In this document: piece after piece, positions 7,016 to 60,478 of the stretch | How the letters are laid out: each line of letters opens with the position of its first letter | Position numbering within the stretch: the stretch's first letter is position 1 | Assembly (NCBI RefSeq): GCF_947568905.1 | Contig: NC_079164.1 | Span: 108,996,001 to 109,060,000 of the forward strand | Source of the DNA: Ostrea edulis | Lineage: Eukaryota | DNA length: 64,000 nucleotides | Direction of reading: 5' to 3' | The notes under the pieces: model-generated | Seen by the model: the letters and a program-made list of their open reading frames with translations, nothing else | Databases searched by the model: none | What the model was told of the DNA's origin: nothing | Position numbers and translations under genes: made by a program

Positions 7016-10000
7016 TTACCAATCTACAAAGAGAAAAATGAAGAGAAAATTACATTATTATAGATTCTAACAAATTAAAGTACGTTTAAGTTCATAAAAG
7101 AAAAGCAAGGATACTTACATTTGATTTTAGAACCTGAAATGTAAATGTAGTTTATGAGAGTACTTTTAAAAAAAATTATATTAAAAAAATTACAGATGAA
7201 ATCTTTTCAAATAGTATTTTCACTAAAAAGTTTCCAAAATTTACCTGCATTATTTCTATTGCGCATCATTCCTCCCATTCCCATCATCCCTGTACCCATA
7301 CCAGATGGCATCATCATTTCAGCGGCTGGCATCATCATTTTTGCAGATGGCATCATCATTTTTGCAGGTGGCATCATCATCATTTCTTGGGCTGGCATCA
7401 TCATTTTTGCAGGTGGCATCATCATTCCTGGGGCTGACATCATCATATTTGCTTGTGGCATCATCATCATTCCTGGGGCTGGCATCATCATATTTGCAGT
7501 TGGCATCATCATTTTGGGTGTAGGTGCCATCATTGAACCTTTATTGCCTGCGTTCATTCCTCCCATCCCACTCATCATAGAAGCAGCTGCCATCATCATA
7601 CCCATATCCATAGGTGACATCGCCATTCCTCCCATACCACCCATTCCTCCCATACCACCCATTCCTCCCATACCACCCATGCTTGGTTTCATCATTTTTC
7701 CTCCTCCCATACCAGGACCCATGATCATCATATCAGCAGCGCCAGCGCCACTTCCTCCAGATGACATAACTGCACCATTTGAACCTCCTCCTACCATAAC
7801 CATCATTTTAGGCCCAGCACTACCAGCTCCAGCAGCTGCTACACCTTCTATTTCACCACCTTCAATTTCTCCAGGCTGTGGAGCCTCTGTTGGCTGAGGT
7901 GGAGATGGCATCGCTGCTTCACCTCCCTTTGCACCACCCATGGCAGCACCCATACCGCCATTCATACCGGCGCCCATACCGCTATTCATACCAGCACCCA
8001 TTTTACCTCCAGACTGCATAGGCACAGGCATCATGCCCTCAGCAGGTGGCATCATACCCGCTGGCATCATACCTGCTGGCATCATTCCCTCAGCTTCTGG
8101 CATTTTTCCTCCAGCTGGCATCATTCCTCCAGCTGGCATCATTCCTCCAGCTGGCATCATTCCTCTTCCTCCCGCTGGCATCATTCCTCCAGCTGGCATC
8201 ATTCCTCCAGCTGACATCTTTCCTCCAGCTCGCATCATTCCTCCACCTGGCATCATTCCTCCAGCTGGCATCATTCCTCCACCTGGCATCATTCCTCCAG
8301 CTGGCATCATTCCTCCACCTGGCATCATTCCTCCACCAGGCATATTTCCTCCTGCTGGCATCATTCCTCCACCTGACATACCTGCTGGCATTCCGTTAGA
8401 CGGCATTCCAGGTTCAGGTGCTGGCATCGGGGCTCCTGTCATCATACCAAGTGAAGAAGGAGCTGGTATCATAGAACCGGGCATCATTCCAGGGGCAGGC
8501 GCAGACATCATAGAACCAGGCATTCCAGGTGCCGGTTCAGGTGCTGGCATCATACCATTAGGCATCATTCCAGGTGAGGAAGGCATCATTCCAGGTGAGG
8601 GAAGCATCATTGAACCAGGCATCCTTCCAGGGACAGGTTCAGGCATTGGGGCTCCTGGCATCATACCAGGTGATGAAGGTGCTGGCATCATTGCATTAGA
8701 CATCATTCTAGGGGCTGGAGCAGATGCTGGCATCATAGCATTAGGCATCATACCAGGTGATGAAGGCGCTGGCATCATAGAACCGGGCATCATTCCAGGG
8801 GCAGGCGCAGACATCATAGAACCAGGCATTCCAGGTGCCGGTTCAGGTGCTGGCATCATACCATTAGGCATCATTCCAGATGAGGAAGGCATCATTCCAG
8901 GTGAGGGAAGCATCATAGAACCAGGCATCCTTCCAGGGGCAGGTTCAGGCATTGGAGCTCCTGGCATCATATCAGGCGATGAAGGTGCTGGCATCATGAC
9001 ATTAGACATCATACCATTAGGCATCATACCAGGTGATGAAGGTGCTGGCATCATACCATTAGGCATCATTCCAGGGGCAGGTTCAGGCATTGGAGCTCCT
9101 GGCATCATACCAGGCGATGAAGGTGCTGGCATCATACCATTAGGCATCATACCAGGAGAAGAAGGCGCTGGCATCATACCATTAGGCATCCTTCCAGGAG
9201 CAGGTTCAGGTGCCGGTGCCATGGGTCCTGGCATACCTTGTATCATCGTATTAGGCATCATTTCCGGGGCTGGGGCAGGCGCCATACCCATCATTCCCAT
9301 TATGTTTCCGCCTGGCATACCATTTCCTGGCATACCCATCATTCCCATCATGTTTCCGCCTGGCATACCATTGCCTGGCATACCATTTCCTGGCATACCC
9401 ATCATGTTTCCGCCTGGCATACCCTTGCCTGGCATACCATTTCCTGGCATACCCATCATGTTTCCGCCTGGCATACCCTTGCCTGGCATACCATTTCCTG
9501 GCATACCCATCATGTTTCCGCCTGGCATACCCTTGCCTGGCATACCATTTCCTGGCATACCCATCATGTTTCCGCCTGGCATACTCTTGCCTGGCATACC
9601 ATTTCCTGGCATACCCATCATGTTTCCGCCTGGCATACCATTGCCTGGCATACCATTTCCCGGCATTCCCATCATGTTTCCGCCTGGCATACCATTGCCT
9701 GGCATACCATTAGGTCTATTGCCTCTCCCTCGCCCTTAAAGAGAAATATAAGTAACGTTTATTTACACAAATTGGACATATTATGCCATTCTATAGCTCA
9801 TATATTGGCGTAATTGTCATTAGTGTGGAGGGAGGGAACCAGATTACCCGTAGTATGCGATCTTTCTTAGTCCATTGGTTGAAACTGGGTCACAATGCTC
9901 AGTTTTATCTGTTTGATCATATATGTTTGCATGAATCTTTAATGACTAAATGATGGATTAATTCGTGTTTTATTAAAGCAGTGCAACTTATCAACACATC

Positions 10001-10134
10001 ATACACGTTATGAAAAAATAGAAAAATACTAAATAGTGTCGTCTATGATACTTTAAGGAAGACTAACCATATGCTCTGGCCTGGGCTCCAGTTATTGCTA
10101 GGAGAAGTATGAAAGACACGGTATGTGACCTCAT
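7016..10134 (-). CDS. Gene A: secreted Met/Gly/Pro-rich repetitive structural protein, 859 aa (abductin/ligament- or shell-matrix-like)
   Basis: Exons 10134-10068 (MRSHTVSFILLLAITGAQARAY, signal peptide), 9734-7245 (repeat core, contains ORF 7207-9705), 7133-7119 (15-nt microexon GSKIK), 7023-7016 (YW*). All GT-AG, all phase 1, total 2580 nt. Confidence 0.88.
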
Positions 10135-10616
10135 CTAAAATTAAAACATATACATAAGAAGACAGAAGGCATTGTTCTAAACTGCTTAATGGCAGTACAC
10201 CAATACACACAAACCACTGTTGATTTCTGATGTTTGGTTAAATGCTTCATTAAACAAATATCAAAGGATGATGAAATAATTTGGGTGGTATTCCGATATA
10301 ATTATACCCTTTTGTGTTTGTTCCTTGTCTGGTTACGGTGGACAAAGTATGATCAAACTTGAATCCATACTAAATGAGGTTGCTTGCATTGTAACACGAT
10401 ATATTATATTCTTCTTGTTTTTATGAGATTTTTGAGGATTTTATCTGTAATTCTTTTTTAAAATTTTACACCCTGTGATATCTATGGAAATCATGGTGTG
10501 CACAAACCTGAATCTATACTGTATATTGAAGGTTGTACATTAAATTGAAAAAGTGTACCCTTGTGATTCTTGGGAGAGAGAAAGCTATATAAAAGAATTT
10601 GCCTGTATAAGCCTAT

Positions 10617-10938
10617 GTGAAAGGTGAAGATAACGAACAGTGATCAATCTCATAAATCCCACAAGCAATACAAAATAGATAGTTGGGCATACACGGACCC
10701 CTGGTTACACCAGAGGTGGGATCAGGTGTCTAAGAGGAGTAAAATCTCCTGTCGACCGGTCACACCCGCCGTGAGCGCTATATCTAGATCAGGTCAACGG
10801 AGTTATCCGTAGTCAAAATCAGTGTGCCAAGAACGGCCTAACAATCGGTATGAAACACTTCAGACAGCATTTGACCCAATGATGGTTGTATTGGCAAACT
10901 AGATCGTTATAACGACTATAGAATTTGCGAAATTAAGA
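10617..10938 (-). mobile_element. Penelope-like (Naiad) 3' end fragment
   Basis: Same family terminus and 3' UTR as 20495-21226. Confidence 0.85.
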
Positions 10939-14539: not shown

Positions 14540-15013
14540 ATAACAGTGTAAATAGCTGCAACTGCGACATTTTGTACTTTTCCCGTGACCGCTTTGCCGG
14601 GTGATCGGTGACTTTGATGTAAGAAATATGAATAGCATGACGATTGGAGGTATGGAGAGAAGCATAATGAACCGTGGCATGGGTAAAGGGATGATGATGT
14701 TTATGATGCCGGGAAGGAATGATGGGATGATGAACAAAGTAGAAAAGGGTAATAGGATGATATTTGATAAATGCAGAAACTATTGGCAATGGTGGCACGA
14801 TGCTGTCTTCAACAACGGGTATAATGGAACGTGGAACGGGCGGGGACATGGAGAGAAGATGGAACAAATGGTAATGAAGTTATGATTAGTACATGGAATA
14901 CGAGAATTGTGCGAGACATGGAGGTGAAATGTAAGTACACATGTTATAATGACCTTGACACAATTGAAATGACAATGATCCTTGTATTTACAGATATGCT
15001 CAGTTCATTCTAA
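14540..15013 (+). pseudogene. Decayed Met-rich paralog of the cluster
   Basis: Met/Gly-rich frame 14601-14885 (RGMGKGMMMFMMPG) with frameshifts and stops; ends ATGGAGGTGAAAT|gtaagt like the K-ending exon of A/B1/B2, then acag|ATATGCTCAGTTCATTCTAA (YMLSSF*); upstream remnant AATATFCTFPVTALPG resembles a signal peptide. Confidence 0.55.
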
Positions 15014-26362: not shown

Positions 26363-27637
26363 TTTCAAGAGCTTTGCTCTACTTTCACTAGTAATGGTAG
26401 AGACTACAGTGCAACGGAATATATATCCATTTGCATTAATTTTTGTATGGTATACAAAATGATACGACTTCTGTTTCATTTGTGTTTTTCCATTCGTTAT
26501 ATATTCTTTCTGTTTCTTTCGTATTGTTTTCAATTTATATTGTGTATTTTTATATTTGAAGCGTTTCCATTAGTATTGTATGGTTTTAAATCCCACCATT
26601 CTCATCTATATGAACTTTTTCTATTTGTTTTAAATATTTCTTTGTATTCTTTAATTTGTATTGCATTTTCTTTTGCATTTTGCAATAAATTATTTGTAAT
26701 CTATAATCCTTCATTTGTTCTTGTTAATAAATTTTATTTCTATTCGGTGTTTCTCTCTGTGAACTTATTCAAAGAATAAGTGTCTGGATGTATTATGAAG
26801 GCATAAAAGCAATCGAAGCATGGGGTAATGACAGGTTACCATATACATGTATCTCCAATGCTTTTACACAATACAACACAATACAAACAACCTAGATATC
26901 TATACTTTATGTCAGAGACAACATATTTTGTCATTTGTTTCTTTTTATTGAAGATTCAATGTTTTATGTAATGATAAATCGCATAAAGCGGATTATTTCT
27001 TACCGTCCAATATAACACATTCCTTCCTATTACATAAATCTGATATACTTCTTTTCTTCACATTTCATTTTTCAACCTGTTTAATGAAATTAAAACACCG
27101 GTATATAAACTTCATAGAGATATGAGATGGCCTAAAAATTACAACATCACGTGCAAAGTTACTTTCAATTCCTGTTTAATTTCGTCCTTAATCTGCTGAA
27201 AAGATTATTGTTGTAAAAAACAAAATTGAAATATCTCTTCGAATTTTATTTACTATCTTATACTTGTAAACTAATCATACATAAAATTGAAGTATATGAC
27301 GCTTATTTTCATAAGAAAAACTGCTAGAATGTATGATATATACAACACTATGCTAAGTACATATCCTTTTAAAAATGTTTGACATATATGGACGCTGACT
27401 CAAAGAATCAAAAGAATGTACAATTCATGAATAAAAGAAGGTGACACGTGTTCAGGATGTCCAGGATACCTTCGAACACATAAAAAGACACTATTTGTTG
27501 AGAATACTTTTCATAATGTGTGTGATCTAAAGAAACCAAACGTGTAAACGTGTCAGGTTAAGATGTCAACAACCAAGTCATGTAAAATTTTGTCCAATCC
27601 ACACTTTTGACTCCGGAAATTCAATGTAACTCATAAG

Positions 27638-27645
27638 TATATAAA
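27638..27645 (+). promoter_or_regulatory. TATA box of gene B1
   Basis: TATATAAA followed by a non-coding exon ending AAAG|gtaagt at 27719; same arrangement in B2. Confidence 0.75.
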
Positions 27646-27835
27646 CCCGCCTGGAAAGAGATTCCGTACAGAGTTCTACTTCTCCTATTGGAATAACTCA
27701 GTCTACCACTTCATCAAAGGTAAGTAGTTGGTAGCATTTCCACTCTGTAAATTTAATGGAAAAAAAACCTAATTGGACAATGAATGTACCATACAAATCG
27801 TTCTTCATTCTCTAGAACTCCATTTTGAATTTCAG

Positions 27836-29337
27836 ATGGCATCTTTCCTTTACGCTGTATCTGCCGCTTTGGCCGTCGCTATGGTCAGTGCTAGAGCTTA
27901 TGGCCCAGGTATGTATATTTGGCACGCTGTTTTTGGCTATATTTAGCTCTAAAACTTCATAGTTATTTCGGATTTCAAACATTTCGGTTGAGCATCACTG
28001 AAGAGACATTATTTGTCAAAATGCGCATCTGGTGCATCAAAATTGGTACTGTATAAGTTTTACATAACTACATATGATGTTAACTGAGTAATGAAGCAGT
28101 GTATACCAATGAATGGATATGTGCCCAAAGAAAGAAAAATGCTTTCAGAATGAGTGAATAACGCTCTTTCTTCATTATTTGATTTCTTTTTCTTGATCTT
28201 TGATAAATTACTTTTTCTCAGGTGGTAATGGTAACAGAATGCCCTCTGGAATGGGAAGTGGTATGATGTCAATGGGAGCCATGGGAGGCAATATGCCAGC
28301 AGGTGCAATGAATGGTGCACCCATGATGAACGCTGCACCCATGATGGCAATGAACGCTGCACCCATGATGAACGCTGCACCCATGATGCCAATGAACGCT
28401 GCACCCATGATGAACGCTGCACCCATGATGCCAATGAACGCTGCACCCATGATGAACGCTGCACCCATGATGAACGCTGCACCCATGATGGCAATGAACG
28501 CTGCACCCATGATGCCAATGAACGCTGCACCCATGATGAACGCTGCACCCATGATGAATGCTGCACCCATGATGAACGCTGCACCCATGATGCCAATGAA
28601 CGGTGGGGCTATGAACGGAGCCATGAAAGCAATTGGTAAAATGATGAAAGCCGCTGCCATGGGTGGAATGCCTTCAATGGGAGGTATGATGCCAATGCCA
28701 ATGGAAGCCATGATGGGAGCTGGAAACATGGGAGCCATGAGCCCAACTGACATGGGCGCCATGATGAACATGGGAGCTATGGGTAACATGGGATCTATGG
28801 GAGGTAGGTTAATATCATATAATGTAATATACATGTACATCATTAAAATAGATGGATTTAGCAAAATAACCAAACAACCTGCGTTTTTATCATAAAAAAT
28901 CCAAGTGCAGTGTCCGTCAACAATCTGTTCATTTCCCCATATTGTTTTGGGAAGTCTTAATCCCTTCCTATTTAATTACTAGTACTACAGTTTTGTAAAC
29001 TATCAGTTTACATTAGAGTTGCAAAACTTTTCTTGTTCATATTGATATAACTGTGAAATAAATCTGCCCAACTGAAATATACATAATAGTACACAAACGG
29101 TGTGTACAAAATATGTCAGGGACTACGTGTTAAGAAATAAGCGCTTTGATATCAAATACGTTGTTCAATGTCATTGATACATTATTACTTTTTATTACAG
29201 GTATGGGAATGAAATGTAAGTATTTTTTTTAAAGTATGAACAGAATGAACAGTTATATTTAGATAATACACAAACGTTGATATAATATGATATGACATTA
29301 TATGGTATTATTTTATATTCTTTCAGCTAGATACTAA
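27836..29337 (+). CDS. Gene B1: secreted Met/Ala/Pro/Gly-rich protein, 226 aa
   Basis: Exons 27836-27908 (MASFLYAVSAALAVAMVSARAYGP), 28222-28803 (MMNAAP/MMPMNAAP repeats), 29201-29215 (microexon GMGMK), 29327-29337 (SRY*); phase-1 GT-AG introns; AATAAA near 29398. Confidence 0.9.
27988..28040 (+). ncRNA. Minimal type I hammerhead motif with G12-to-A core mutation, in the B1 intron after the signal-peptide exon
   Basis: CUGAAGA GACA-UUAUU-UGUC AAAA UGCGCAUC; within an insertion of about 142 bp (27922-28063) absent from the paralogous B2 intron. Confidence 0.75.
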
Positions 29338-29951
29338 AAGTAGCTGACTAATACTCAACATCTCTCAGGACCATCTACATGTATTCATCGTGCATATAAT
29401 AAAGACCTGCAATAACAAGCTGTATTTTTATTTTATGAAGCAGAAAAACATATATTCATATATGATATTGTTAGTTGATAGAACCAAATGTACCTAAAAT
29501 GGAAGAGTCAACGAAGATATGAAAAATGCATGCGTTTTAAACTGGGCAGACAATGTACAATGTCAAGCAAATATAGCAACGCGAACAAGAATTTGTCTTC
29601 AATTGTGATATACATCTATATGAGTAGCAAAGATGATGTGGTATGCTAGGAAAAAGGTGTTTCAAAATCAGATAAAATTTGAATTGTTCACTGAACTGAG
29701 CGTCCCATTGACCAAGACCGTGAATAGTTCATTTTCATAGAGGATCATTACCAAACCTAATTAAACAATTTTGGCCGCGACATCGCATTTGATGAGGAGC
29801 AAACTACCAAGTACTCGAACATTTGCTTTGGAAAGATATAAAACAAAATATGTTTTCAAATGGCGAAAAAGTTATTTCCATTATTTTTAAATGCATTGAT
29901 AGTTTACATCTACCAAGGAAAATTAAAAAGGCTTCTCCATAGTTGATAAAC

Positions 29952-36974: not shown

Positions 36975-37428
36975 CTAACGCTTCATATGTACGTTTTCTA
37001 AAACCACGAAAGGTTTTGATTAAACAAATATAACCCGTGTTTTTCTTAATTTGAAGGTGATAATAGTTTAGTTCAAATAAAACTTAATTGTCTGGTTTTC
37101 GAACAACAAACTATCTAAGTGTTTTCAATATAAGTACTTTTTTAAGATCCAGCTATAGAATGCTCAATGTTTTCCATCTACTTACCTTACATTAATTTTT
37201 TCACCCTTGTTCTTACATTTTATGGGAACAGCTTTTACACTCTTACATAATCACGAATTAATGTACATGTATCTGAACAACTACTTCAAGTTTATTTTCA
37301 CACACTATGTGTGGGATCTAGAGGAAATCAAGGCGTAAACTTGTCAGGTTAAGATGTCAAACAACAAAGTCATGTAAAATTATACTCAATTAACGTATCT
37401 TCTCCGGAAATTGATTGAAACAAATAAC

Positions 37429-37435
37429 TATAAAA
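37429..37435 (+). promoter_or_regulatory. TATA box of gene B2
   Basis: TATAAAA followed by a non-coding exon ending AAAG|gtaagt at 37510. Confidence 0.75.
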
Positions 37436-37614
37436 ACCCGTCTGTAAAGCTATTCCGTACAGAGTTCCATTTCTCCGGCTAGAGTAACTCAGTCTACCAC
37501 CTCATTAAAGGTAAGTACAAAGAATGTAGCTAGAGGTATTTTCACTAAGTAAAGTTAAACTACTTCAAAAATGATTTTTTAAAATCGTTCTTTAGAATTT
37601 CATTTGAATTTCAG

Positions 37615-40077
37615 ATGGCATCTTTCCTTTACGCTGTATCTGCCGCTTTGGCCGTCGCTATGGTCAGTGCTAGAGCTTATGGCCCAGGTATGTATATTTG
37701 TATAACATGATATTGATTCAGCAAAGAAACATTGAAATATTAGAATGGAAATGAGCTCAAACTTGGAGAAAGAAAAAAGCCTTTATAAGAAGTGAATGAC
37801 GCCCTTTATTTAAGTTTTCTTTTTCCTGATCTTTGATAAATTACTTTTTCTCAGGTGGTAATGGTAACAGAATGCCCTCTGGAATGGGAGGTGGTATGAT
37901 GTCAATGGGAGCCATGGGTATGATGCCAAAGAACGGTGCACCCATGATGCCAATGAACGCTGCACCCATGATGCCAATGAACTCTGCACCCATGATGCCA
38001 ATGAACTCTGCACCCATGATGCCAATGAACGCTGCACCCATGATGCCAATGAATGCTGCACCCATGATGCCAATGAACTCTGCACCCATGATGCCAATGA
38101 ACGCTGCACCCATGATGAACGCTGCACCCATGATGCCAATGAACGGTGCCATGAATGCAATTGGTAAAATGATGAAAGCCGCTGCCATGGGTGGAATGCC
38201 CTCAATGGGAGGCATGATGTCAATGCCAATGAATGGAATGATGGGAGCTGGTAACATGGGCGCTATGGGCAGCATGGGATCCGCAGGAAGCATGGCAGGT
38301 AAGCTGACATCATATAACGTACTATTTATCATTAGAAAAGCTCGAATTTGATGTATAAAATAACAGAAAACTAAGCGTTTGTTATCAAGTGCAGTGTCAG
38401 TCAACAGTATGGCATTTCCCAATATTGTTTTGGGAAACATTAATCCCTTTCTATTGGATTTCAAATAACATATTCATAGTTATGAAGAAACGGTTTTTAA
38501 CTCTCAGTTAAAATTACATTTTTTCTGCTTTACCTGGATTTGCCTATGAAATAAATCCGTCTAACTGAAGTATGAAATTTCCCCCCTACTGTGAATAGTG
38601 GTTCATGTATCATTATTGTAAATTAGCAAGAAAATTTCCAACTTATGTTATTAAAATAGTCGTTGTGGTAAAGAGATAAGCACTTCAATATCGAAGATCT
38701 GTTTTCAAAAGAATTAAACTTTTTTATTGCAGGTATGGGAATGAAATGTAAGTATATTTTTGCAAGCATCAACAAAGAGAACCTTTATATATGATAATAA
38801 TACTTCAAAGTTAATATAATAAGATATAATATAGCCTAATATATTATAAGACTGAATAATTCCGAGATTTCTGATTGGCTGAGACACAACAAATCAGAAA
38901 AATAGAACATTATGTTCACTTCGCTGTGTCTTCGAGGTGAATATAACATTCGATTTCTCGAACATTGGGAATTTCCAGACTGATGCGATTTGTTTTTATT
39001 TTTCGTCATCCAATGAAAACTTGCGTCTCTCATCACTTTCGTCCAAGTCTTGCACTAATGATGTAAAACAAAGATGGTCGATTAAATATCATTTGATAAG
39101 CTGAATAGTAGGTGGTTTTGATGTTTTGAATTATTCAATCAAATGATAAACAAAACACTCGCATCTCTCATCACTTTCGAGTAGGTTTTGTGCTAAAGCT
39201 GTAAAAAAAAACAAATAAAAAGATGGCGGATCAAGTATCTTTTCGTAAGCTTTAGTAGCCGGCTGCGATATCATACAATTATTGAGGTCAATATGATGTT
39301 CAAAGTAGAATAGTCACCTAGCCTGAATAAATAAAACATCGAAATTGGCTAATAGACCTACGAAACTAACCCAGATCAGCCATCACTGTATAGCCTAGAC
39401 TGCAACAGATGGTCGAAAATGAATAGAGACGCGAGTTCTTGCTTACTTTATGACTGAATAATTTCATACATCGAAACTGGCTAAAACGAGAACTTAATCA
39501 TTTATTCCTGAACAGATATATTTCGATCGGGTTCGGTGTTACTATAAATCAACAATATAGTCAATACAGCTTGTGATAGAAGTCATTATTTATACACATT
39601 CTACTGCAAGATAGTCAAAAGTGAATAGAGGTGCGAGTTCTCATTGTGTGACAAAAACGATATTCATCATTTGGAAATTCCCAATTCACTTTTGGTCATA
39701 TGTTAAAGAAAGCTAGAGTTATATTCATCTTGAAGGCAAGTGCAGGAGAATAGTTAAAGTTCTATTTTTCCGAGGTTGTTGAATCTCAACCAATCAGAAC
39801 GCACATAATTATTCAATCATATAAGAATTTGAATTATTCAATCATATAATAATACTATTATTGAAATTGTATCAGTCAATACAATGTTTCTGCTACCCTA
39901 AACGTACAATACTCACCAGGCCCTCTGGGCTCGATAAAAATTGTACTTCTCGTGAAGCTAAATGACGGTCTTGACCTAAAAAAGTCAATAAGCGTATGAT
40001 ATAATGTCAATAAAATGTATGATATAATGTCAATAAATGTATGATATAATGTTCTTTCAGCTGGATACTCTGCGTAA
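37615..40077 (+). CDS. Gene B2: secreted Met-rich paralog of B1, 182 aa
   Basis: Exons 37615-37687 (identical signal peptide), 37855-38298 (MMPMN(A/S)AP repeats), 38733-38747 (microexon GMGMK), 40061-40077 (SGYSA*); last exon and UTR homologous to B1; AATAAA at 40131. Confidence 0.9.
38845..39830. mobile_element. Foldback/MITE-like insertion in last intron of B2
   Basis: About 70-bp inverted ends (TATAAGACTGAATAAT...CTGATTGGCTGAGA...GAAAAATAGAAC versus GTTCTATTTTTCC...CAACCAATCAGAA...ATTATTCAATCATATAAG); related sequence near 31070-31260. Confidence 0.65.
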
Positions 40078-40240
40078 CTGACTAACCATCTCTCAGGACT
40101 ATTCATGTGTATTTTATAATATAGAATTGCAATAAAGAGCTGTATTTTCCTTGAATTGTCTAAGTGTGTCATTATTTGTTAGAATCAAGTCTCTCCAAAG
40201 AGAAGAGTGAAAAAAAACATGTAATATACATGTGTATCAG

Positions 40241-45538: not shown

Positions 45539-45816
45539 CATATCGTTATTGTATCCTTCGTAACTTCGTAAAATCAACTGCTAAATGCAGAGTTTCAGAT
45601 AAAGTGCAGCTTTCTTTGAAATCCACGATGATTTTCACATATAGCAGTGTTAGCTCATTTTCTTATGATTATTCATCGTTGTAGAAGACGTAGTTTTACA
45701 CATTGAAGGATGTAGTCGGACATCTGTTCAGTGTTCTCGTTTTCACTTCAATGTCACCGGTAACACCTCCCAGTGTGTCAAAACGACCACGACAGCAGAA
45801 GTGGAGTGCCGGATAT

Positions 45817-45823
45817 TATATAA
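45817..45823 (+). promoter_or_regulatory. TATA box of gene C
   Basis: TATATAA followed by a putative non-coding exon ending AGAAG|gtgaga at 45889. Confidence 0.65.
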
Positions 45824-46137
45824 GTAACCTAGGTAAAGAAACTTTCACGAGAACTTTTGTCTTCCGTCAAATTCACTCTGCGGCAGAAGGTGAGAACTCT
45901 CTTAACAAATTTATGCAACGTATTTCAAATTTTTCAGAAATTTATTTTATCACGATCATCGATGTCGTTGTATTTATTGTTTTAGCTTATGTACTGTTTT
46001 ATATTCGACACTGCAGACTGACAATTACGATAAACCTTTACTGTTTTCAAGAGATTCTCTATGCCTTTAGTACAATATGTCTTATGAGGGATGTGGAATA
46101 TTTGCCGCTATTTTTGACGTATTTCCTGTTGTTTCAG

Positions 46138-47524
46138 ATGGCACCCTCCATGGCAGTGTTTTCCTTGTTGTCTGCAACACTGGTAGTTTCTCTTGTTCAT
46201 GGTAAATAAGATATATATCACATATCGAAATAGCATATCTATAGAATTAGAATTAACTAGATTTTTTTTTCTAAACGTGCACTGTGTCAGTGGCGGTTTT
46301 TAATCTACAACTTTGATACACTGCTGGAACATAGGAAATGAAATTAATCTTTGGTACTCCAAGTTACACTACGTTGAAGTTTTCCGGATTAAAGTAAATC
46401 AGAGAGATTATTAATGGACTGGATTATCAAAAGTGTAATTTGGATACTTTAGATGTGCAGAAAGTGGACAATGTTGATCAATTCTACTACTATATTTTTT
46501 CTTTAAGACCTTTATTGAAAATCTTAAAAAGCGGAAAACCACTGTACTCGTGCGTTTGTAGATCTAAACTTTCAGGATTTATATGCAAAATTTCAATTTC
46601 CCTGGTTTATTTACAAAAATTTATTTTACAAAGATAAATTCTGATGTTGAGATGTTTGTTAGCTAGATTTTGATTACGCGTTGGAGATTAAAAATAAGAT
46701 CTACATGTTGGAAAGTTTCTATAACAGAATAACGATAATAATAATGACGTAAAGTTGAGAGAAGTAACCGTACTTTATTCGCAGGTGGACTCATTCCAAC
46801 AAATAGCGGCATGGGAATGCTGGTAGTCCCAATCGGTAATGGTGAGGAACCGGCCAGACCCGTGGTCATTATCCCAGTTGTGTTGGGACATCAGAGACCC
46901 ATGATGCCAAAACCCATGATGATGCCCATGATGCCAAAACCCATGATGATGCCCATGATGCCCAGACCCATGTCACCCAAGCCTGCGATGATGAAGTACC
47001 CTATATCGCAAAACATGATGCCAGCTCAACCACAACAGATCGAGAGACCAGAAATCAAGACAGATGCCAGTGAGTAACGTCAATGATTTCTTTATATGAT
47101 TTGTTATTCTGAAATATATAATGTATATACATGTATATAGACAATCAACAACATAGCAAGTTATAAACCAAGGCTTTAAGAACATTTTATCAATAGAAAA
47201 TGAAAACTTTATAGCATTCAAATGTATGTGCATGTATAGACATTCTCCTGGAGTAGAATTCTGATACATTTTGAATTGAATTAATTAGAAGCACTGGGAC
47301 GCATCTTTTCATTTCCTTTATTTTTACCAATGTTGTCTTATCATGGCAACACCATGTTAAAACTTGTTGCCTTTATAAAATGATATAATCATTCGAAAGG
47401 GGTACAAATGGCATAACAAACTCCACAGCTAGGAGCATGCATTTGTTTAATTTTCTATTTTTCGTTTTGCTAAATTGGGTTATTTTCTCGCTTTTTAGGA
47501 GGTCGACAAACTCTGGAATTCTGA
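46138..47524 (+). CDS. Gene C: secreted Met/Pro-rich protein, 124 aa
   Basis: Exons 46138-46201 (MAPSMAVFSLLSATLVVSLVH), 46785-47069 (PMMPKPMMM repeats), 47499-47524 (RGRQTLEF*); phase-1 introns; AATAAA near 47620. Confidence 0.8.
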
Positions 47525-47651
47525 AGAAAATGCCCATTCCAGTGATGTTTTATATCGCCAGAAGTCGCATTAAAATGTTTATCCTTCACTGAAGTCTGTG
47601 ATACTTTATGTAGATTTAGAATAAACATCTCTACCTTCGTAGATTCCTCTT

Positions 47652-47891: not shown

Positions 47892-49723
47892 TATACAAGA
47901 TTTTTCCTTCTTCTTTAAATGAAAAGGTTAAAAGATAATGAACAATAACAAATCTGAAGGTTGTATGTTTTCATTCTGTAATATATACCATTGCATTGAA
48001 TGAGTTATAAAATTGTAAGTACAGCCTTTATCAAATATACATCTGTCTAAAATGAAAATTGACATATATGCACCAAAGATATACAAAAGCAGATTGGCAC
48101 CACCTGAAGCTGTAATGAATAGACACTTTTATCAAGATTTCATCAAAATGAATTATTGATAATCTTAATTCCTGTGCAGACGATATCTGTGAACGTACTG
48201 ATACTTACTTATTGATCTGCAGCTGGGTATTTAAGATATAAATTGTATGAAGTATGAACTGTGACACTTCACGCTGGTTGGAAACGAATGTATTTTCAAA
48301 AAATGAAGTTTACTTCTAATATTTACATTCTACTTTCATTTCTCTTTCGACATTTCCAGTCGTTAGAATAAAAGTACTATTTTTATCAAGATTTATACGA
48401 GCAATGTTTACGACTGCAACGCATTCATTAGAAATTGACTACCATTACAATTTGTAAAGATATCAAAGGCAAAAAACATTGGACATGTAGATATGTAACT
48501 GCATCACGCTTTCCAAGATTTTTTATTGTGTTGTCAATTAATGGCAGCTAGTATATTGTATTGGTTCCATTCAATTCCTGCACATTTACCTAACCTAACC
48601 AAAGTGCATATTTTATGTCCTTCTTTAATTGTCCTTGAACAAAGTTAATGTGGATCATCGTCTGATGATATCATAGGTCTTTCTTTTCTTTCGTCCATTA
48701 ATGTAAAACACGGGTTTAATCGACCGGAAATGAAATGTTTTACGACAGTTGGCGTCTCAAGACAATTTATATTTGATGCTTCAATGTGCTTTTCAACACA
48801 GAGAGGAATAAAACTGACGCATTTCCTACACCAAAAAACGTGTGAACATCTTCTGTTTATACACAAGAACAACAAAAGGAACATACATTTCCATGTTCTT
48901 TCATTATAAATTTTGTATTAATTTGAAAACAAATCACATAAAACGAAATTTACGTAATAATTAGAGTGTAAAATAATCACAGTATAATACAGCACCTGAC
49001 AATATCAACATATCAATTATTCATAGCAATAAAAATCATCTACTACATCATTTAACATAGGAATGATAAATCTATTGGGTAACAGAATGGCTTCGTTTGT
49101 TACAATATCATGAACCAAATTGTGTAATCTTTTTAAAATGATTAGTAATTCATACTTTTCATTTTAATTAAAGGGACTGGTTCAAGTTTTTCGAAAGAAA
49201 TGGGGTTTTTTTTTGTTGGTTAAATAATAAAGTATAGCTCATTTAATGTTGACAACCAAAATTTGGACCGTCTGAATGCAAGGATAAGAGCAATATTTTA
49301 GCTTTGATTCTGTGTTATGTAAACAAAGACTTTAGTCTTTTTATGTAAACAAACAAACCAATAAAACGTTAATTTTGTAATTCAAAACATCTTTATTTTG
49401 TACAATCACAAATTTTAACTTTTAAATGACACATTTTACCTACAGTATACCTGAGATGTGATATATATGATAAACTTGGATCAATATTCATTTATCTTGA
49501 AAACCCCGTAAACAATAACACTCCTCAATCTTTGTTTTCAAAACAAATAATAAACTCTCTGTGATGAGCTTCTGTCATGATGAATAATAATAATTTTTTG
49601 GTGAAACCCTCTAAACATGAAAATCGTGAATCAGTCCCTTTAAAACATTTTCCCCCATGAAAAGTTTTAACCTTTTGGTTACACGGCAAGTAATCCCCAT
49701 AGGTTGCAAAAATTCTTTGTGTT

Positions 49724-50486
49724 TTAGTAGATATGTTTTCCTAAAAAGTCATTTAACATTAAGTCTCCAACAGTTATCAGATTTGGCGTGGCTTGTTGTT
49801 GTTCAAGAATCGGGCTCAATGGGCTCAGATTCCAATGAGGAAATTTTTGCTTTTGTTGTTTATGAGTCGTTATTTTCCAACTCAGTGGTGATGGCCATCC
49901 TGAGACCGACGTCATGGGGTTTACCCAGGAACGCCTGGAGGGCATCATTCCAGTGCTCGTTGAAAATGGCACGACTTCGCTTTTGATTACAGTGCCTGAA
50001 AACAAATGAACGGTACTGTATGAAATTAAATGACATTTACAAGTGTTCGACCAAAGAATATCGATAGGATTATTAATAATTCTTTTGAGTAAAAACGATT
50101 ACAGAATGGGTCCTATTTACACTGTTACGGAAGAGTCAAATACATATTTAAGAAATAAATTTCAGTTTTGAAAATATATGAGAAAAATAACTGTGATATT
50201 TACAGAATTGTCAGAATTCCAATCAGTTATAACAGACGAACTATATTTATCAAGATCCATACGCACATTGTTCACGGCTGCGGAACATGAGGAAATGGCT
50301 ACCATTACAATTGGTAAATAATTATAATGAAGGTAAACACATTGGAAAGTGACTATTTGTTTATAAAACCTTCACAAACAGGAAATATACGCGTGTACAA
50401 ATTTACAACCAGTACTTACTTGAACATTTCAGTATTAGGAGGGACAAGAAAAGGAAAACAGGGAAGACAATCGCCGTTAGTTTCAT
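49724..50486 (-). CDS. Gene D: putative small secreted orphan protein, 112 aa
   Basis: Exons 50486-50420 (MKLTAIVFPVFLFLSLLILKCS, |gtaagt) and 49995-49724 (STVIKSEVVPFSTSTGMMPSRR...KHIY*), phase 1; candidate non-coding exon ending AGAG|gtaagt at 50748. Confidence 0.6.
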
Positions 50487-50562
50487 CACGCATGTGAACT
50501 GCAAATAGATACACTAGCTTAATTATCCAGTATTCTAAAATAAAAGATTCTTTAATCATTAT

Positions 50563-56669: not shown

Positions 56670-56723
<54 letters not shown>

Positions 56724-58745
56724 TTTAGAAAAGTCGTCAATGCATTTTTACTATTTTGCTGTTATTGTGGCCCTTCATTTGAATAATCATGAATCCCCAT
56801 TACACCAGGTAGCTTTGTGCCAGGTTTGGTTGAAATTGGTCCAGTGGTTTTGGAGAAGAAGTCTAAAATGTGAAAAGGTTACAGACAGACAAACGACGGA
56901 CAAGAGGTGATCAGAAAAGCTCAGTTGAGCTAGTTAAAAACGTTTAAGGAATGCATACTAAAAATCAAAACTTTTCCAGATTATTCTTCGTATAGGAAGG
57001 AAATATGATGACGTCGTCCATCTGTCAGATTCAAAATAAATTCATCTATGGAGAAATTATGTAAACGAATATGTATAAATCAAAGTACTGACAGTACAGC
57101 TGGGACTGAGTTGCACCGCCTGGAATAATTACGATAATATCGATAACATATTCACATCTATTGATCCACCAATGACCCGAGAACAATTAGGTGGAAAGTT
57201 TCCTCTCAAAAACATCTAATTCAATTGAAAAATCCTACTTCCCGCTAATGAGGTGTAAAGAATCATGCCTAACGAGAGAGCGAGTCGATTCCTTAGTAGC
57301 AGGAATTTGGAATCAGGGGCAGGCAACCAACATAATTGTACAATTTAAGTTCACTCCACTATATGTATGAAAAGTTTTTGTGTTTATCAATTGGAGAGAA
57401 TCAGTTTTGATTCCTCGAACGATAAATACTTATCCGTTTAATTAACAAAGTCTGAGTTGCCTAAATATGTGCTGTTTTAAAAGCACGAACTATTCTGATT
57501 TTACATTCTAAATATGTATATCATTGTTTTACATAACATTAAACTGAATGAAACGATGTTTCTTGAATTAATATATACTTCCAAAAATCCCAATCAAGGG
57601 AATTCGGAAATTAACTATCCATTTAGGATATAAAAGAAATGAATAGCCAGAAAAGGATTAATTTCAGAATGGAAAGAACATGTATGGGAATGGTCTGTCG
57701 TAAACGTAACCGGAATGAAAAGAAGGGGGAAAATCTACTATATAATAGGTTTTCCGTGGGAGTCATCTGGCTATAAAATGGGGAAATCCTACTATATAGC
57801 CACATTTCCGTGGGGGAAGATCTACTACATGGTCATTTTTCCGGGGGGGGGGGGGACTACTATATAGCCATTTTTTCCGGGGGGAGGGAGAGATGGCTAG
57901 GGGGAAAGGCTACTATACAAGACCGGTCACACCCGCCGTGAGCCCTATATCCTGATCAGGTAAACGAAATTATCCGTAGTCAAAATCAGTGTGTTAAGAA
58001 GAACGGCCTAACGATCGGTATGAAACATGTCAGACAGCATTTGACCCAATGATAGGTTGTATTGACGAACTAGATCGTTATAACGACCATAGAATTTGCA
58101 AAATGCTGACTTCAATCGAGACTGTTGAAACCCCTGTACCAACTTGTTTGTCAGTAGCTTGCCTCGATTTAAAAACTGACTATACGCAGAACAAGCTCTT
58201 GCATATCGAATCAGTTGAGATATATAAACACCATATGCAAGTGATAATGGAATATTGCTACATAAATATGGGAAGTTGACGATGGAGAAGCTGAAATCAT
58301 CCCGTTTGTCATAAAGTTGAGTTGTCAGTTTGCCGTTAATGTCTACTTTCAATAAAATATCTAAGTATGAAGCAGAAGTGGACGACTCTGTGGTGTCTTT
58401 TATTTCGAGCTCACATGGATATATCGAATCGACATATGAATGAAAGTTATTATTGTTAATAGACAAAACGTCGTCGATATATCTAAATGTCGAATTGAAG
58501 GTCACAGCAAGAGATTTTTTATTCTCGCGTATAAGTTTTTGAATAAATTACGCTTCATATGAATATAGAAACAGGTCAGTTAACAAAGGAGAACAATTTG
58601 TACCCATAGGAATTCCAACAGACTGTTGGAAGACCTGATCACCAAAGACCACGAAGATATTGTGAATGAGGAACTCTAGCATATTTTTTATTTCAACTTC
58701 AGAATACTTGTGCTTGGAATAAGTATCAAATTTAAGGTAGAAATT
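55368..58745 (-). mobile_element. Longest Penelope-like (Naiad) copy (55368-55511 plus 57921-58745), split by a 2.4-kb insertion
   Basis: RT motifs QSVGIPMGTNCSP (58548-58754) and FRYIDDVL...YDKRDDF (58008-58505), one in-frame TAA; 3' UTR resumes across the insertion. Confidence 0.9.
55512..57920. mobile_element. Composite non-autonomous DNA-transposon-like insertion with inverted subterminal repeats
   Basis: Flanked by duplicated GACCGGT (55505-55511 and 57921-57927); CCCCGGAAAAATGGCTATATAGTAGTC units inverted at both ends; contains a Helentron-like copy at about 56508-56940. Confidence 0.6.
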
Positions 58746-59498
58746 ACAATACATGTACTTTATTTAAATACAAACAATTATTAACCATTTTCTTTTTTTC
58801 TTTTGGTGGTAAATATGGACTTTTAGCAATATTAAAACATTTGAAAATAGTTTTACAAAATTCTATATAACAGTTTTTGGGCATCCCAATCCTCTGCCCT
58901 TAATATGAGTTTTAGATTCTTTTGTTTAAAAAAAAAAAATTCACTCTCTTCGATCCACTTTGCTTTTGACCTTACACATTGTCCATTTAACTCATTTCGT
59001 CGAATATCTTATCATTCTTTTTGCTTCTTGGTAAGCCCATCCAAAACTTCATTATCAAACATTTGTTTAAATTCACACTTTTACACAACATTTATTTCTA
59101 TATCTGTCACACATTAAAACTTATGTTTTCCAAAATAAAAAAAGTGAATGACTTGAATTGAAAGTTTTGAATTAATATTACAATATCAATCACATGCATG
59201 TGACGCACAGTTTTTTCTTAGAAGGAGAGGTGACACACACACCCCTCCCCAGAAAAAAACAAATTAAAAAATATATAAAATGCGCATCACCATTTTTATT
59301 GTAAAGCAATAAACGATGATACATTATTGATAGTTTATAAAAGAAATTCAATTTCAATTTTTGTTTTATATACATGTATAAGATCAAGAATACTCATCAC
59401 AGTCGGATGTAAATAGATATATATGTTAGCACAGTTTTCTTACTCATTGCAAACTTCTACACATTCACTGTCATTATTCCAATGTTTGTATTCCCAGT

Positions 59499-60478
59499 TT
59501 AGTAGTATCTGTGATAATTGAACTTTGTCATAGCTCTTCGGGCGCTTGGTGTAAGAAATTTATTACCCATCATAGAGTTGGACATTGCACTCGACGGCAT
59601 AGCTGACATCATCATAGCGTCCATCATTGGATTTGACATCGTAGAAGAGGACATAGTATTTGACATGGGATTTGTTGAGGACATGGACATCATTGGATTG
59701 GTAGTCATTGACATCATAGGGCTCGAAGACATGGACATCATCGGACTTGTAGAAGACATGGGCATCATAGAATTGGTTAAAGACATGGTCGCCATGGGAT
59801 CGGCAGACATCGCCATCGCCGGATTGGAGGAAGCCATAGCCATCATACGACTTCGGGTCATCATGTTTCTTGCCAATCTAGACATCATCGAAAGGACAGC
59901 TCGCATCGTGGGAGATGTCGTCATCATTTGAGTAATTACTGGCATTGATGTCCCAGTCATCATGGCCAACATAGCTGCATCTCTAAGAAGAGGCGTGGAC
60001 ATTGAACTGCTTAACATACTGCTCGACGGGTTCATTGAAGTGACCATTGGACTGGACATCGACATACCTGCAGCCAATTCAGCGGACGGAGAAGACATCG
60101 CATTGGCCAGAGCGTTACTCATTGCTGCGGCTGACATGGTGTTCGACATGGACGACGCTGGAATGATCGAATCACGCATCCCCATCGTGGATTCCGACGC
60201 CATAGATGGACTGGATGCCATATGTGACATAATTCTGGGATGTCTCTCTAAATATATAAAGCAAAAGGTAAACCGAAATTGATATACCAAAAAAACAACT
60301 CTTTATAATTGCATCGAATAAGAATATTTGTTTTCAGTGGTAAAGAGCATATACTAAACCCTAAGAACTGGATGTAATTTAAAGGATAGAAATACTTACT
60401 GTGGTATTTGATTGGTTTTGGTATAGCGTTTACACAGCACGCTAGCGCCATCATTAGAACGACGGTGAAAGATTCCAT
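59499..60478 (-). CDS. Gene E: secreted Met/Ser-rich protein, 275 aa
   Basis: Exons 60478-60400 (MESFTVVLMMALACCVNAIPKPIKYH) and 60247-59499 (KRHPRIMSHMASS...KFNYHRYY*), phase 1; non-coding exon ends AAAG|gtaagg at 60616. Confidence 0.88.

What the first reader, a model, noticed from the sequence alone, without database searches (positions are those of the whole stretch)
7016..60478. Cluster of secreted Met-rich elastomer-like protein genes: candidate oyster hinge-ligament (abductin-like) locus
Seen in sequence: five Met-rich genes (A, B1, B2, C, E), an orphan secreted gene (D) and a decayed paralog lie within 54 kb. Each intact gene has a signal-peptide exon closed by a phase-1 intron and a low-complexity mature exon, with Met roughly a quarter to a third of the repeat cores by eye. 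Established knowledge: bivalve hinge-ligament proteins are Gly/Met-rich (scallop abductin, Pinctada ligament Met-rich protein LMP), and Met-rich shell-matrix proteins such as MRNP34 exist. Inference: this is a co-regulated structural-protein locus with different repeat chemistries (MPG/GGM, MMNAAP, PMMPKP, MSS), probably poorly annotated because of low complexity and microexons.
Basis: partly seen in the sequence, partly recalled or inferred. Interest (0 to 1): 0.85.

Follow-up and report, generated by a model that had tools for sequence, protein, structure and literature searches.

The report
Oyster methionine-rich secreted protein gene cluster
A 54-kb stretch of an oyster genome holds six real, mostly unannotated genes for secreted, methionine-rich, disordered proteins; three are built like the pearl-oyster hinge-ligament protein LMP, but where they are expressed could not be tested.

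Summary
Five Met-rich genes (A, B1, B2, C, E), one small secreted gene (D) and a decayed copy lie at 7016-60696. Each intact gene has a signal-peptide exon closed by a phase-1 intron. Met is 20-32% of the proteins.

They are genes, not satellites:
- B1 and B2 are 100% identical in the signal and 15-nt micro-exons and 67-74% in introns. All seven gaps in the repeat exon are multiples of three.
- C, D and E lie in the same order in Saccostrea cucullata, with dN/dS about 0.2 for C and E.
- My three-exon model of C reproduces the annotated 105-aa Saccostrea protein exactly.

A, B1 and D have no counterpart among 5.8 billion database proteins.

The abductin reading fails: there is no GGFGGMGGGX repeat and no Cys, and Pro is high. 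The LMP reading is partly supported. Mature A, B1 and B2 have aromatic residues only at the first and last one to three positions. That layout matches Pinctada LMP, whose YGP start B1 and B2 share. Sequence similarity beyond that is not significant.

The only usable sequencing runs proved to be DNA, so ligament expression and co-regulation are untested.

Best reading: end-cross-linkable matrix proteins, with the ligament favoured for A, B1 and B2 (about 0.45).

The parts
10068..10134 (-). Gene A signal-peptide exon. The ATG at 10134 lies directly after an AG acceptor. The 67-nt exon ends ...ARAY + G with a phase-1 GTTAGT donor.
7245..9734 (-). Gene A repeat exon (830 codons). Its blocks are GMPGNGMPGGNMM, MMPAPSSPGMMPNG, GGMMPAGG and a K/N/E-MMMP-x-A unit. 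It is phase 1 at both ends, with a CAG|GTAAAT donor at 7244.
7119..7133 (-). Gene A 15-nt micro-exon (G)SKIK, phase 1-1, flanked by a tttcag acceptor and a gtaagt donor.
6952..7023 (-). Gene A terminal exon. It encodes the last residues Tyr-Trp plus the stop (7023-7016), then the 3' UTR up to an ATTAAA signal at 6957-6952.
10209..10308 (-). Gene A putative promoter and 5' UTR exon (TATA-like GGTATAATTATATC, weak donor). This is the least certain part.
27637..27719 (+). Gene B1 TATA box (27637-27647) and short 5' UTR exon ending at a CAAAG|GTAAGT donor. The region is conserved with B2.
27836..27908 (+). Gene B1 signal-peptide exon (73 nt, ...SARAYGP + G, phase 1). The ATG abuts the tttcag acceptor.
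28222..28803 (+). Gene B1 repeat exon (MMNAAP / MMPMNAAP units), phase 1-1, with a G|GTAGGT donor.
29201..29215 (+). Gene B1 15-nt micro-exon (G)MGMK.
29327..29403 (+). Gene B1 terminal exon (Ser-Arg-Tyr-stop at 29327-29337) and 3' UTR up to AATAAA at 29398-29403.
37428..37510 (+). Gene B2 TATA box and 5' UTR exon.
37615..37687 (+). Gene B2 signal-peptide exon, 100% identical to the B1 exon.
37855..38298 (+). Gene B2 repeat exon. It is 89% identical to the B1 exon, and all seven gaps are multiples of 3.
38733..38747 (+). Gene B2 15-nt micro-exon, identical to the B1 micro-exon.
40061..40136 (+). Gene B2 terminal exon (Ser-Gly-Tyr-Ser-Ala-stop). It follows a 1.3-kb intron enlarged by an insertion. 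AATAAA lies at 40131-40136.
45816..45889 (+). Gene C TATA box and 5' UTR exon (CAGAAG|GTGAGA donor).
46138..46201 (+). Gene C signal-peptide exon (64 nt, phase 1). The ATG abuts the tttcag acceptor.
46785..47069 (+). Gene C main exon (PMMPKPMMM repeats, ...IERPEIKTDA). It ends in a phase-1 A|GTGAGT donor, not at the in-frame stop two codons later.
47499..47625 (+). Gene C terminal exon (RGRQTLEF-stop at 47499-47524) and 3' UTR with AATAAA signals. It is conserved in Saccostrea and annotated there.
50420..50498 (-). Gene D signal-peptide exon (ATG at 50486, 67 coding nt, CAA|GTAAGT donor, phase 1).
49392..49995 (-). Gene D main exon (49995-49724, ending ...DLMLNDFLGKHIY-stop) and 3' UTR up to AATAAA at 49397-49392.
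60616..60696 (-). Gene E TATA box (60696-60685) and 5' UTR exon. The promoter has blocks conserved with Saccostrea.
60400..60478 (-). Gene E signal-peptide exon (79 nt, phase 1). The Saccostrea exon has the same length and plan.
59295..60247 (-). Gene E main exon (60247-59499). It is Met/Ser-rich with a conserved helical core and a Tyr/His-rich tail ending KFNYHRYY-stop. The 3' UTR runs to AATAAA at 59300-59295.
14600..14935 (+). Decayed A/B-type copy. It has a Met-rich ORF of about 94 codons and a relic of the micro-exon with its GTAAGT donor. No signal exon was found.

Best explanation
The region is a cluster of six transcription units for secreted proteins. At least its C-D-E part is conserved among oysters.

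A, B1 and B2 are paralogs with one five-exon plan:
- a 5' UTR exon;
- a signal-peptide exon that also supplies the first mature residues, Tyr-Gly(-Pro);
- one long exon that is nothing but Met/Gly/Pro (A) or Met/Ala/Asn/Pro/Gly (B1, B2) tandem repeats;
- a 15-nt micro-exon ending in Lys;
- a tiny last exon that supplies Tyr or Tyr-Trp.

The products are therefore long, disordered, uncharged chains without Cys. Their only aromatic, cross-linkable residues sit at the two ends.

I infer that they are secreted by shell-forming mantle epithelium. There they would be tied end to end through the terminal Tyr, possibly with the neighbouring Lys. Tyrosinase or peroxidase chemistry is the candidate route. 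The result would be an insoluble, flexible, hydrophobic network, as proposed for the Pinctada ligament protein LMP, which has the same layout.

The hinge ligament is the most likely destination for A, B1 and B2.

C (Pro/Met/Lys repeats) and E (Met/Ser-rich, with a conserved helical core and Tyr/His/Lys/Arg-rich ends) are probably further components of the same or a related matrix. D is a small non-repetitive secreted protein of unknown role.

Shown here: the gene structures, paralogy, orthology, selective constraint and composition. Inferred: secretion, cross-linking, tissue and material.
For: Gene reality:
- All six genes have a hydrophobic signal exon, compatible phase-1 splice sites and poly(A) signals. 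B1, B2, C and E also have canonical TATA boxes; A has only a TATA-like motif and none was found for D.
- B1 and B2 are 100% identical in the signal and micro-exons and 89% in the repeat exon, where gaps are only multiples of 3. Their introns are 67-74% identical.
- All periodicities in the A exon are multiples of 3.
- DNA contigs from four runs carry the gene A sequence.

Conservation:
- E matches Saccostrea XP_062593025.1 at E = 5e-48.
- The order E, D, C and the relative strands are the same on the Saccostrea contig.
- Identities are E 61%, C 58% and D 46%. dN/dS is 0.21 for E and 0.20 for C.
- My C model reproduces the annotated 105-aa coding sequence, including the 26-nt last exon.
- The E promoter has conserved blocks.

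LMP-like design:
- The aromatic residues are at mature positions 1, 837 and 838 in A, at 1 and 205 of 205 in B1, and at 1 and 159 of 161 in B2. None of the three has Cys.
- The LMP sequence printed in supplement 4 of PMC7591529 runs: signal peptide, YGPRNRGKMMP..., (MMMKPD)n...HPTPYNLYQG. It has no aromatic residue between the two ends.
- The N-terminus of B1 and B2 aligns without gaps to that of LMP, with p about 0.009 against layout-preserving shuffles.
- In Pinctada, Met-rich proteins make up the insoluble matrix.

Disorder: Pfam finds no domain. The AlphaFold model of E is mostly below pLDDT 50.
Against: - No transcript evidence for this genome. The runs found were DNA, with even depth over introns and intergenic DNA.
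- No proteomic evidence, and no open paper on true-oyster ligament proteins.
- Similarity of the mature parts to LMP is no better than composition predicts. A's N-terminus is not significantly similar.
- Met-rich insoluble proteins also occur in nacre and prism, so the ligament is not singled out.
- The signal-peptide cleavage site and Tyr cross-linking are inferred, not computed or measured.
- A, B1 and D are absent from the protein databases. This fits missed annotation but would also fit lack of expression.
Confidence: 0.45

Rival explanations
1. The genes are the same, but the products are framework proteins of the calcified shell layers or the periostracum. They would be made by mantle edge or pallium rather than by the ligament-forming isthmus.
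For: - In Pinctada, Met-rich regions are common to the insoluble proteins of nacre, prism and ligament. The Met-rich NU-5 is a mantle edge/pallium protein that is nearly absent from the isthmus (PMC7591529).
- The five Met-rich proteins have very different chemistries, which would suit several materials.
- E and C have no LMP-like N-terminus.
Against: - A, B1 and B2 have almost no acidic residues: 0-2 in B1 and B2, and 2.6% in A. The Pinctada study notes that its ligament proteins lack the acidic regions seen in nacre and prism proteins.
- The end-only aromatic layout and the YGP start match LMP specifically.
Confidence: 0.25
2. The products go into another secreted material or fluid. Candidates are adult or larval cement, mucus, egg or larval coats, and digestive secretions.
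For: - Nothing in the sequence ties the proteins to shell. The signal peptide, the disorder and the absence of database kin fit any secreted low-complexity protein.
- D is not Met-rich and looks more like a small secreted peptide precursor.
Against: - The only characterised proteins with this composition and layout are bivalve ligament and shell proteins.
- Cys-free, aromatic-poor, Met-rich chains are not typical of the known DOPA-, Cys- or phosphoserine-rich marine adhesives (my own knowledge, not tested here).
Confidence: 0.15
3. The Met-rich proteins bind or buffer soft metals such as Cu(I), in the way that MxM and MxxM motifs do in bacterial PcoE/SilE and in Ctr1. Oysters accumulate much copper.
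For: - A weak feature-based look-alike of E is the SilE/PcoE cluster (score 0.49).
- MxM and MMxM motifs are dense, and E has His at both ends.
Against: - A score of 0.49 is far below the level at which such hits mean anything and is driven by composition.
- A, B1 and B2 have no His at all.
- Their length and tandem-repeat architecture fit a material rather than a chaperone.
Confidence: 0.05
4. A, B1 and B2 are not expressed genes. They would be minisatellite-like repeats that happen to carry open frames, or recently dead genes.
For: - There is no database counterpart and no RNA evidence.
- The repeats also give long ORFs on the opposite strand.
- One decayed copy exists.
Against: - B1 and B2 show perfect conservation of the signal exon and the micro-exon, against 67-74% identity in introns. 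Only in-frame indels occur in the repeat exon.
- A and the B genes share a five-exon plan with phase-compatible consensus splice sites.
- All periodicities are multiples of three.
- The neighbours C, D and E are under purifying selection.
Confidence: 0.04

Closest known systems
LMP, the ligament methionine-rich protein of Pinctada fucata (Suzuki et al. 2019). The sequence used here is the one printed in supplement 4 of PMC7591529.
   Same: - Secreted.
- The signal peptide is followed directly by Tyr-Gly-Pro (B1, B2) or Tyr-Gly (A), then a short Arg/Asn/Gly stretch.
- The long body is made only of Met-rich tandem repeats that contain Pro.
- No Cys.
- Aromatic residues lie only at the first and last few residues.
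- Met is 27-32% here and higher in LMP.
   Different: - The repeat units are unrelated. LMP has MMMKPD, which is charged. The units here are GMPGNGMPGGNMM, MMPAPSSPG and GGMMPAGG in A, and MMNAAP in B1 and B2, which are nearly uncharged and rich in Gly or Ala/Asn.
- There is no significant similarity outside the N-terminus.
- The exon plan and genomic neighbours of LMP are unknown to me.
- Ligament location is not shown for the oyster proteins.
Abductin of scallops (Cao, Wang and Bayley 1997), as summarised in PMC13052691.
   Same: A Gly- and Met-rich, disordered, secreted elastomer candidate with a few Tyr thought to serve cross-linking. Gene A comes closest, with Met 27% and Gly 24%.
   Different: - No GGFGGMGGGX decapeptide.
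- No Phe and no Cys.
- No Ala-rich N-terminal domain with two Cys.
- Pro is 12-21% instead of very low.
- The proteins are much longer.
Other Met-rich insoluble shell proteins of Pinctada: NU-5, P,NU-5, pfu_aug1.0_1662.1_66071.t1 and MRNP34.
   Same: - Met-rich low-complexity regions in insoluble matrix proteins.
- The second ligament protein (66071) has a Met/Asn/Gly-rich tail that ends in Tyr, like B1, D and E here.
   Different: - Those proteins combine the Met-rich part with acidic or Ser- and Gln-rich regions or with folded domains.
- The proteins here are almost pure repeats.
- No sequence comparison with MRNP34 was possible.
Saccostrea cucullata LOC134254519 (XP_062593025.1, uncharacterised protein) and the neighbouring annotated 105-aa gene.
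   Same: They are orthologs of E (61% identity) and C (58%), with the same exon plans, order and relative strands.
   Different: - Neither has a known function.
- The annotated E ortholog starts at an internal Met and so lacks its signal peptide.
- The D ortholog is not annotated there.

Membership tests
Abductin | Gly/Met-rich domain built of the decapeptide GGFGGMGGGX | tested here: not met
   The motif is absent from all six proteins, and mature A, B1 and B2 contain no Phe at all. The feature is as stated in PMC13052691.
Abductin | Ala-rich N-terminal domain with two conserved Cys and conserved Tyr | tested here: not met
   All mature proteins have zero Cys. In A, B1 and B2 the N-terminal region holds a single Tyr at mature position 1.
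Abductin | Very low proline content | tested here: not met
   Pro is 18% in A, 12% in B1, 14% in B2, 21% in C and 8% in E.
Abductin | Main protein of the inner hinge ligament (resilium) | not testable with these tools
   No RNA or proteome data could be reached. The runs found were DNA.
LMP-type ligament Met-rich protein | Signal peptide followed by Tyr-Gly-Pro and a short Arg/Asn/Gly segment | tested here: met
   B1 and B2 read ...ARA YGPGGNGNRMP and A reads ...ARA YGRGRGNRPNGMP. LMP reads ...VYS YGPRNRGKMMP. The ungapped alignment of B1/B2 to LMP gives p about 0.009, while A is not significant. C, D and E do not have this start.
LMP-type ligament Met-rich protein | Body made of the tandem hexapeptide MMMKPD | tested here: not met
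   MMMKPD is absent. Other Met-rich tandem units are present. The mature parts are no more similar to LMP than shuffled sequences are.
LMP-type ligament Met-rich protein | Aromatic residues confined to the two chain ends, and no Cys | tested here: met
   The positions are 1, 837 and 838 of 838 in A, 1 and 205 of 205 in B1, and 1 and 159 of 161 in B2. LMP as printed has Tyr only in YGP... and ...YNLYQG. That this defines the family is my own reading of one sequence.
LMP-type ligament Met-rich protein | Expressed in the mantle isthmus and present in the insoluble ligament matrix | not testable with these tools
   Searches gave no RNA. The literature searches found no data for true oysters.
Oyster E family (Saccostrea LOC134254519) | Sequence orthology, shared exon plan and synteny | tested here: met
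   E = 4.9e-48, 61% identity and dN/dS 0.21. Both signal exons are 79 nt long, with a phase-1 intron. The neighbours D and C follow in the same order.
MRNP34 (Met-rich nacre protein) | Sequence similarity to MRNP34 | not tested

The most novel reading that the evidence does not exclude
A, B1, B2 and Pinctada LMP may belong to one old pteriomorph gene family of 'telechelic' elastomer proteins. In this design the exon structure keeps every cross-linking residue out of the repeat exon. Tyr comes from the signal exon, Lys from a 15-nt micro-exon, and Tyr or Trp from the last exon. Chains could then join only at their ends and form a natural end-linked rubber network. The repeat exon would be free to change its chemistry and length. 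On this reading the conserved C-D-E neighbours are the rest of the oyster ligament toolkit, and the locus would give the first molecular handle on the hinge ligament of true oysters.
Probability: 0.25. Interest if true: 0.75.

Novelty: new variant of a known kind. Interest (0 to 1): 0.55.

Why it matters
The open literature I could search describes bivalve hinge-ligament and insoluble shell proteins from Pinctada (LMP) and from scallops (abductin). It holds nothing for true oysters.

If these genes make ligament or shell framework material, they supply several things:
- sequences for a natural compressive elastomer;
- a clear and testable design rule, namely that cross-linkable residues sit only at the chain ends and are encoded by separate exons;
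- a compact locus in which repeat chemistry has diversified;
- examples of large genes that annotation pipelines miss because of low complexity and micro-exons.

They would also allow marker-based study of hinge formation in a farmed and restored species.

Tried and rejected
- **Word-indexed homology searches.** The B1 repeat exon gave no hit. The D main exon shared no words with any database protein. The A repeat exon gave two spurious hits. A local phmmer control showed that self and paralog hits would have been found despite the composition. The blanks therefore mean absence within the length range searched.
- **Pfam** on all six proteins found nothing.
- **ESM Atlas look-alikes** for A and E scored only 0.75 or less and reflect composition.
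- **RNA evidence.** The one run search returned five DNA-like runs and one weak possible RNA run. Laying four of them showed even depth over introns and intergenic DNA, so they are genomic.
- **Exact look-ups of ORF-type products** for C, E, A and the Saccostrea C exon found nothing on record.
- **Literature searches** for oyster ligament or Met-rich proteins, for abductin in Crassostrea and for six peptide motifs found nothing specific. The 2025 Biomacromolecules paper on the LMP repeat is not held.
- **Spliced full-length proteins** were not sent to the exact look-up tools. They have no single reference and would have had to be typed.
- **The Saccostrea locus** could not be extended beyond 10 kb on either side of E, so whether A- or B-type genes lie next to C there is unknown.
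- **Rfam** at gathering threshold found nothing in the window.
- **A shared promoter motif.** The conserved E promoter block GACAGTCCAAAG occurs only once in the window.
The stop two codons after ...TDA is rejected in favour of a spliced 26-nt last exon.

Full report
**1. What is there**

The window has no gaps. Listing ORFs showed exceptional Met-rich frames:
- 7207-9705 on the minus strand, 832 codons;
- 28200-28895 on the plus strand;
- 37833-38351 on the plus strand;
- 46811-47077 on the plus strand;
- 59499-60290 on the minus strand.

Upstream of each lies a short exon. It starts with ATG, encodes a hydrophobic signal-type peptide and ends at a GT donor after codon position 1. The long exon continues in frame behind an AG acceptor.

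In A, B1, B2, C and E the ATG follows an acceptor directly. In B1, B2, C and E the sequence is tttcagATGG; this 12-mer pattern gave 6 matches (with up to one mismatch) against 1.2 expected. A 5' UTR intron therefore abuts the start codon.

TATA boxes, short 5' UTR exons with GT donors and AATAAA or ATTAAA signals are in the expected places.

The sixth gene, D, was located on the minus strand at 50486-49724.

The predicted proteins are as follows:

| Gene | Length (aa) | Composition |
|---|---|---|
| A | 859 | Met 27%, Gly 24%, Pro 18% |
| B1 | 226 | Met 32%, Ala 21%, Gly 15% |
| B2 | 182 | Met 32% |
| C | 124 | Pro about 21%, Met about 20% |
| D | 112 | not Met-rich |
| E | 275 | Met 23%, Ser 23% |

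**2. Are they genes or repeats with accidental frames?**

Tandem repeats also give long frames on the opposite strand here, so ORF length alone proves little. Four other lines of evidence settle it.

- **B1 versus B2.** They are tandem duplicates. The signal exon (73 of 73 nt) and a 15-nt micro-exon (15 of 15 nt) are identical. The repeat exon is 89% identical, and its seven gaps are 30, 36, 12, 12, 15, 24 and 9 nt long. The introns are 67-74% identical, with gaps of arbitrary length.
- **Shared exon plan.** A, B1 and B2 share an unusual plan. After the repeat exon there is a phase-1 donor, then a 15-nt phase 1-1 micro-exon with a strong acceptor and a GTAAGT donor. A tiny last exon follows. 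The proteins end ...GSKIKYW...GMGMKSRY and ...GMGMKSGYSA.
- **Periodicity.** The twelve strongest self-similarity offsets in the A exon are all multiples of three.
- **Independent DNA.** Contigs from four DNA runs match the gene A region with no differences in the exon pieces they cover, so the assembly is sound.

**3. Relatives elsewhere**

B1, D and A have no counterpart among 5.8 billion proteins. A control showed that phmmer finds self and paralog matches for these sequences at that database size.

The exhaustive search with E found one protein, XP_062593025.1 of Saccostrea cucullata. It is an 'uncharacterized protein' and matched at E = 4.9e-48.

The 21-kb locus around it (L001) contains three genes:
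- the E ortholog;
- an unannotated D ortholog on the same strand, 4.2 kb (D's start codon) to 4.7 kb (its stop) beyond the end of E;
- an annotated 105-aa gene on the opposite strand, which is the C ortholog.

The order and relative strands are the same as in the window.

Aligning the C loci revealed a conserved 26-nt last exon. With it, my model of the Saccostrea gene has exactly the annotated coding range (18756-17366) and length. C in the window therefore ends ...TDA RGRQTLEF, not at the in-frame stop.

The Saccostrea E exon 1 encodes a full signal peptide upstream of the annotated start.

| Gene | Identity to Saccostrea ortholog | dN/dS |
|---|---|---|
| E | 61% | 0.21 |
| C | 58% | 0.20 |
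| D | 46% (last 20 residues almost unchanged) | not computable, synonymous sites saturated |

Synonymous sites are saturated in all three comparisons. The E promoter keeps several blocks, including the TATA box. C, D and E are thus old, constrained oyster genes.

A note from another agent calls this genome a flat oyster. I did not verify that.

**4. What the proteins look like**

- Pfam finds no domain in any of the six.
- E is predicted to be disordered except for helices at residues 85-136 and 233-247 of the main exon, with pLDDT about 70. These coincide with its most conserved block and with its tail.
- The most telling feature is where the aromatic residues lie. In mature A (838 residues) they are at positions 1, 837 and 838. 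In B1 they are at 1 and 205 of 205, and in B2 at 1 and 159 of 161.
- Cys, His and Phe are absent from A, B1 and B2, and charge is very low.
- These end residues come from separate exons. The Tyr comes from the signal exon, a Lys from the micro-exon, and Tyr or Trp from the last exon.
- E also keeps Tyr, Phe and His at its two ends, in both species.

**5. Comparison with known proteins**

*Abductin.* As summarised in PMC13052691, it has a GGFGGMGGGX repeat, an N-terminal domain with two Cys, and very little Pro. None of this is found here, so the genes are not abductins.

*LMP.* The LMP sequence printed in supplement 4 of PMC7591529 reads: signal peptide, YGPRNRGKMMP..., a long run of MMMKPD, then ...HPTPYNLYQG. 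It has no aromatic residue in between.
- A, B1 and B2 have the same layout, and B1 and B2 share the YGP start.
- The ungapped N-terminal alignment scores 47, with p about 0.009 against shuffles that keep the hydrophobic-then-polar layout. A, C, D and E are not significant.
- The mature parts are no more alike than their composition predicts.
- Kinship with LMP is therefore possible but unproven. Resemblance in design is clear.

*Limits of Met-richness.* The same paper shows that Met-rich regions occur in insoluble proteins of nacre, prism and ligament. It also notes that its ligament proteins lack acidic regions. The near absence of Asp and Glu in A, B1 and B2 leans towards the ligament but does not settle it.

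**6. Most likely mechanism**

Secreted, disordered, hydrophobic Met-rich chains would be joined through their terminal Tyr, and perhaps Lys, into an insoluble flexible network.
- Shown: the gene structures, the composition and the placement of the end residues.
- Inferred: secretion, cross-linking and elasticity.
- The destination is favoured to be the hinge ligament for A, B1 and B2, at about 0.45 for the whole statement. I put the reality of the genes above 0.9 and a structural extracellular role at about 0.7.

Rivals are shell-layer matrix (0.25), another secretion (0.15), metal binding (0.05) and non-expressed repeats (0.04).

**7. What could not be done**

- No RNA or proteome data were reachable. 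No paper on true-oyster ligament proteins was found.
- Co-regulation is untested, and the conserved E promoter block is not shared with the other genes.
- Whether A- or B-type genes adjoin C in Saccostrea is unknown, because the locus could not be extended.

**8. Verdict**

This is a new variant of a known kind. The known kind is the Met-rich secreted bivalve matrix protein. What is new is the set of repeat chemistries, a modular exon plan that confines cross-linkable residues to the chain ends, and a partly conserved cluster that is largely missing from annotation.

Noticed in passing
window 27918-28064; copies at 19490-19636 and 43268-43413: A 147-bp element sits in intron 2 of B1 and is absent from B2. 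It has a 98.6% identical copy at 19.5 kb and an 87% copy at 43.3 kb. The 43.3-kb copy overlaps the hammerhead-like motif that another first-stage note flagged. Rfam at gathering threshold reports no family anywhere in the window.
   Followed up: partly
window 6400-6800 and 10600-11400: Very high-copy repeats flank gene A, with summed contig depth of 10^5-10^6 against about 30-140 for unique DNA. An 83-bp piece at 10618-10700 has more than ten copies inside the window.
   Followed up: no
window 24713-26361, 32509-33546, 33949-34996, 35235-35700: Four satellite arrays lie between B1 and B2, with units of 27, 37, 19/38/57 and 27 bp. The last gives Met-containing ORFs in several frames but has no gene features.
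   Followed up: no
window 49724-49790; L001 15580-15642: D ends in a 20-residue motif that is almost unchanged between the two oysters: NLIT-x-x-DLMLND-(F/L)-LGKHIY. The Gly-Lys before the last three residues could be a processing or amidation site, so D may be a peptide precursor rather than a matrix protein. It is not annotated in Saccostrea.
   Followed up: partly
L001 9953-10031: The RefSeq model XP_062593025.1 of Saccostrea starts at an internal Met. The same exon encodes a full signal peptide 16 codons upstream, directly after a tttcag acceptor. The annotated protein therefore wrongly looks non-secreted.
   Followed up: yes
window 59850-60010 (E main-exon residues about 85-136): E is not pure low complexity. 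A block of about 55 residues (PLLRDAA...SMMSRLA) is over 90% identical between the genera and is predicted helical with pLDDT about 70. It may be an assembly or interaction module.
   Followed up: partly
window 20717-21190 and 58008-58505, minus strand: Two related reverse-transcriptase fragments (YIDDVL motif) of a retroelement. A similar fragment lies in the Saccostrea locus at L001 4862-5266.
   Followed up: no
window 38748-40060: The last intron of B2 is 1.3 kb, against 111 nt in B1, because of inserted DNA that includes a 22-bp tandem repeat at 39984-40052. The B2 stop codon has moved two codons downstream relative to B1.
   Followed up: partly
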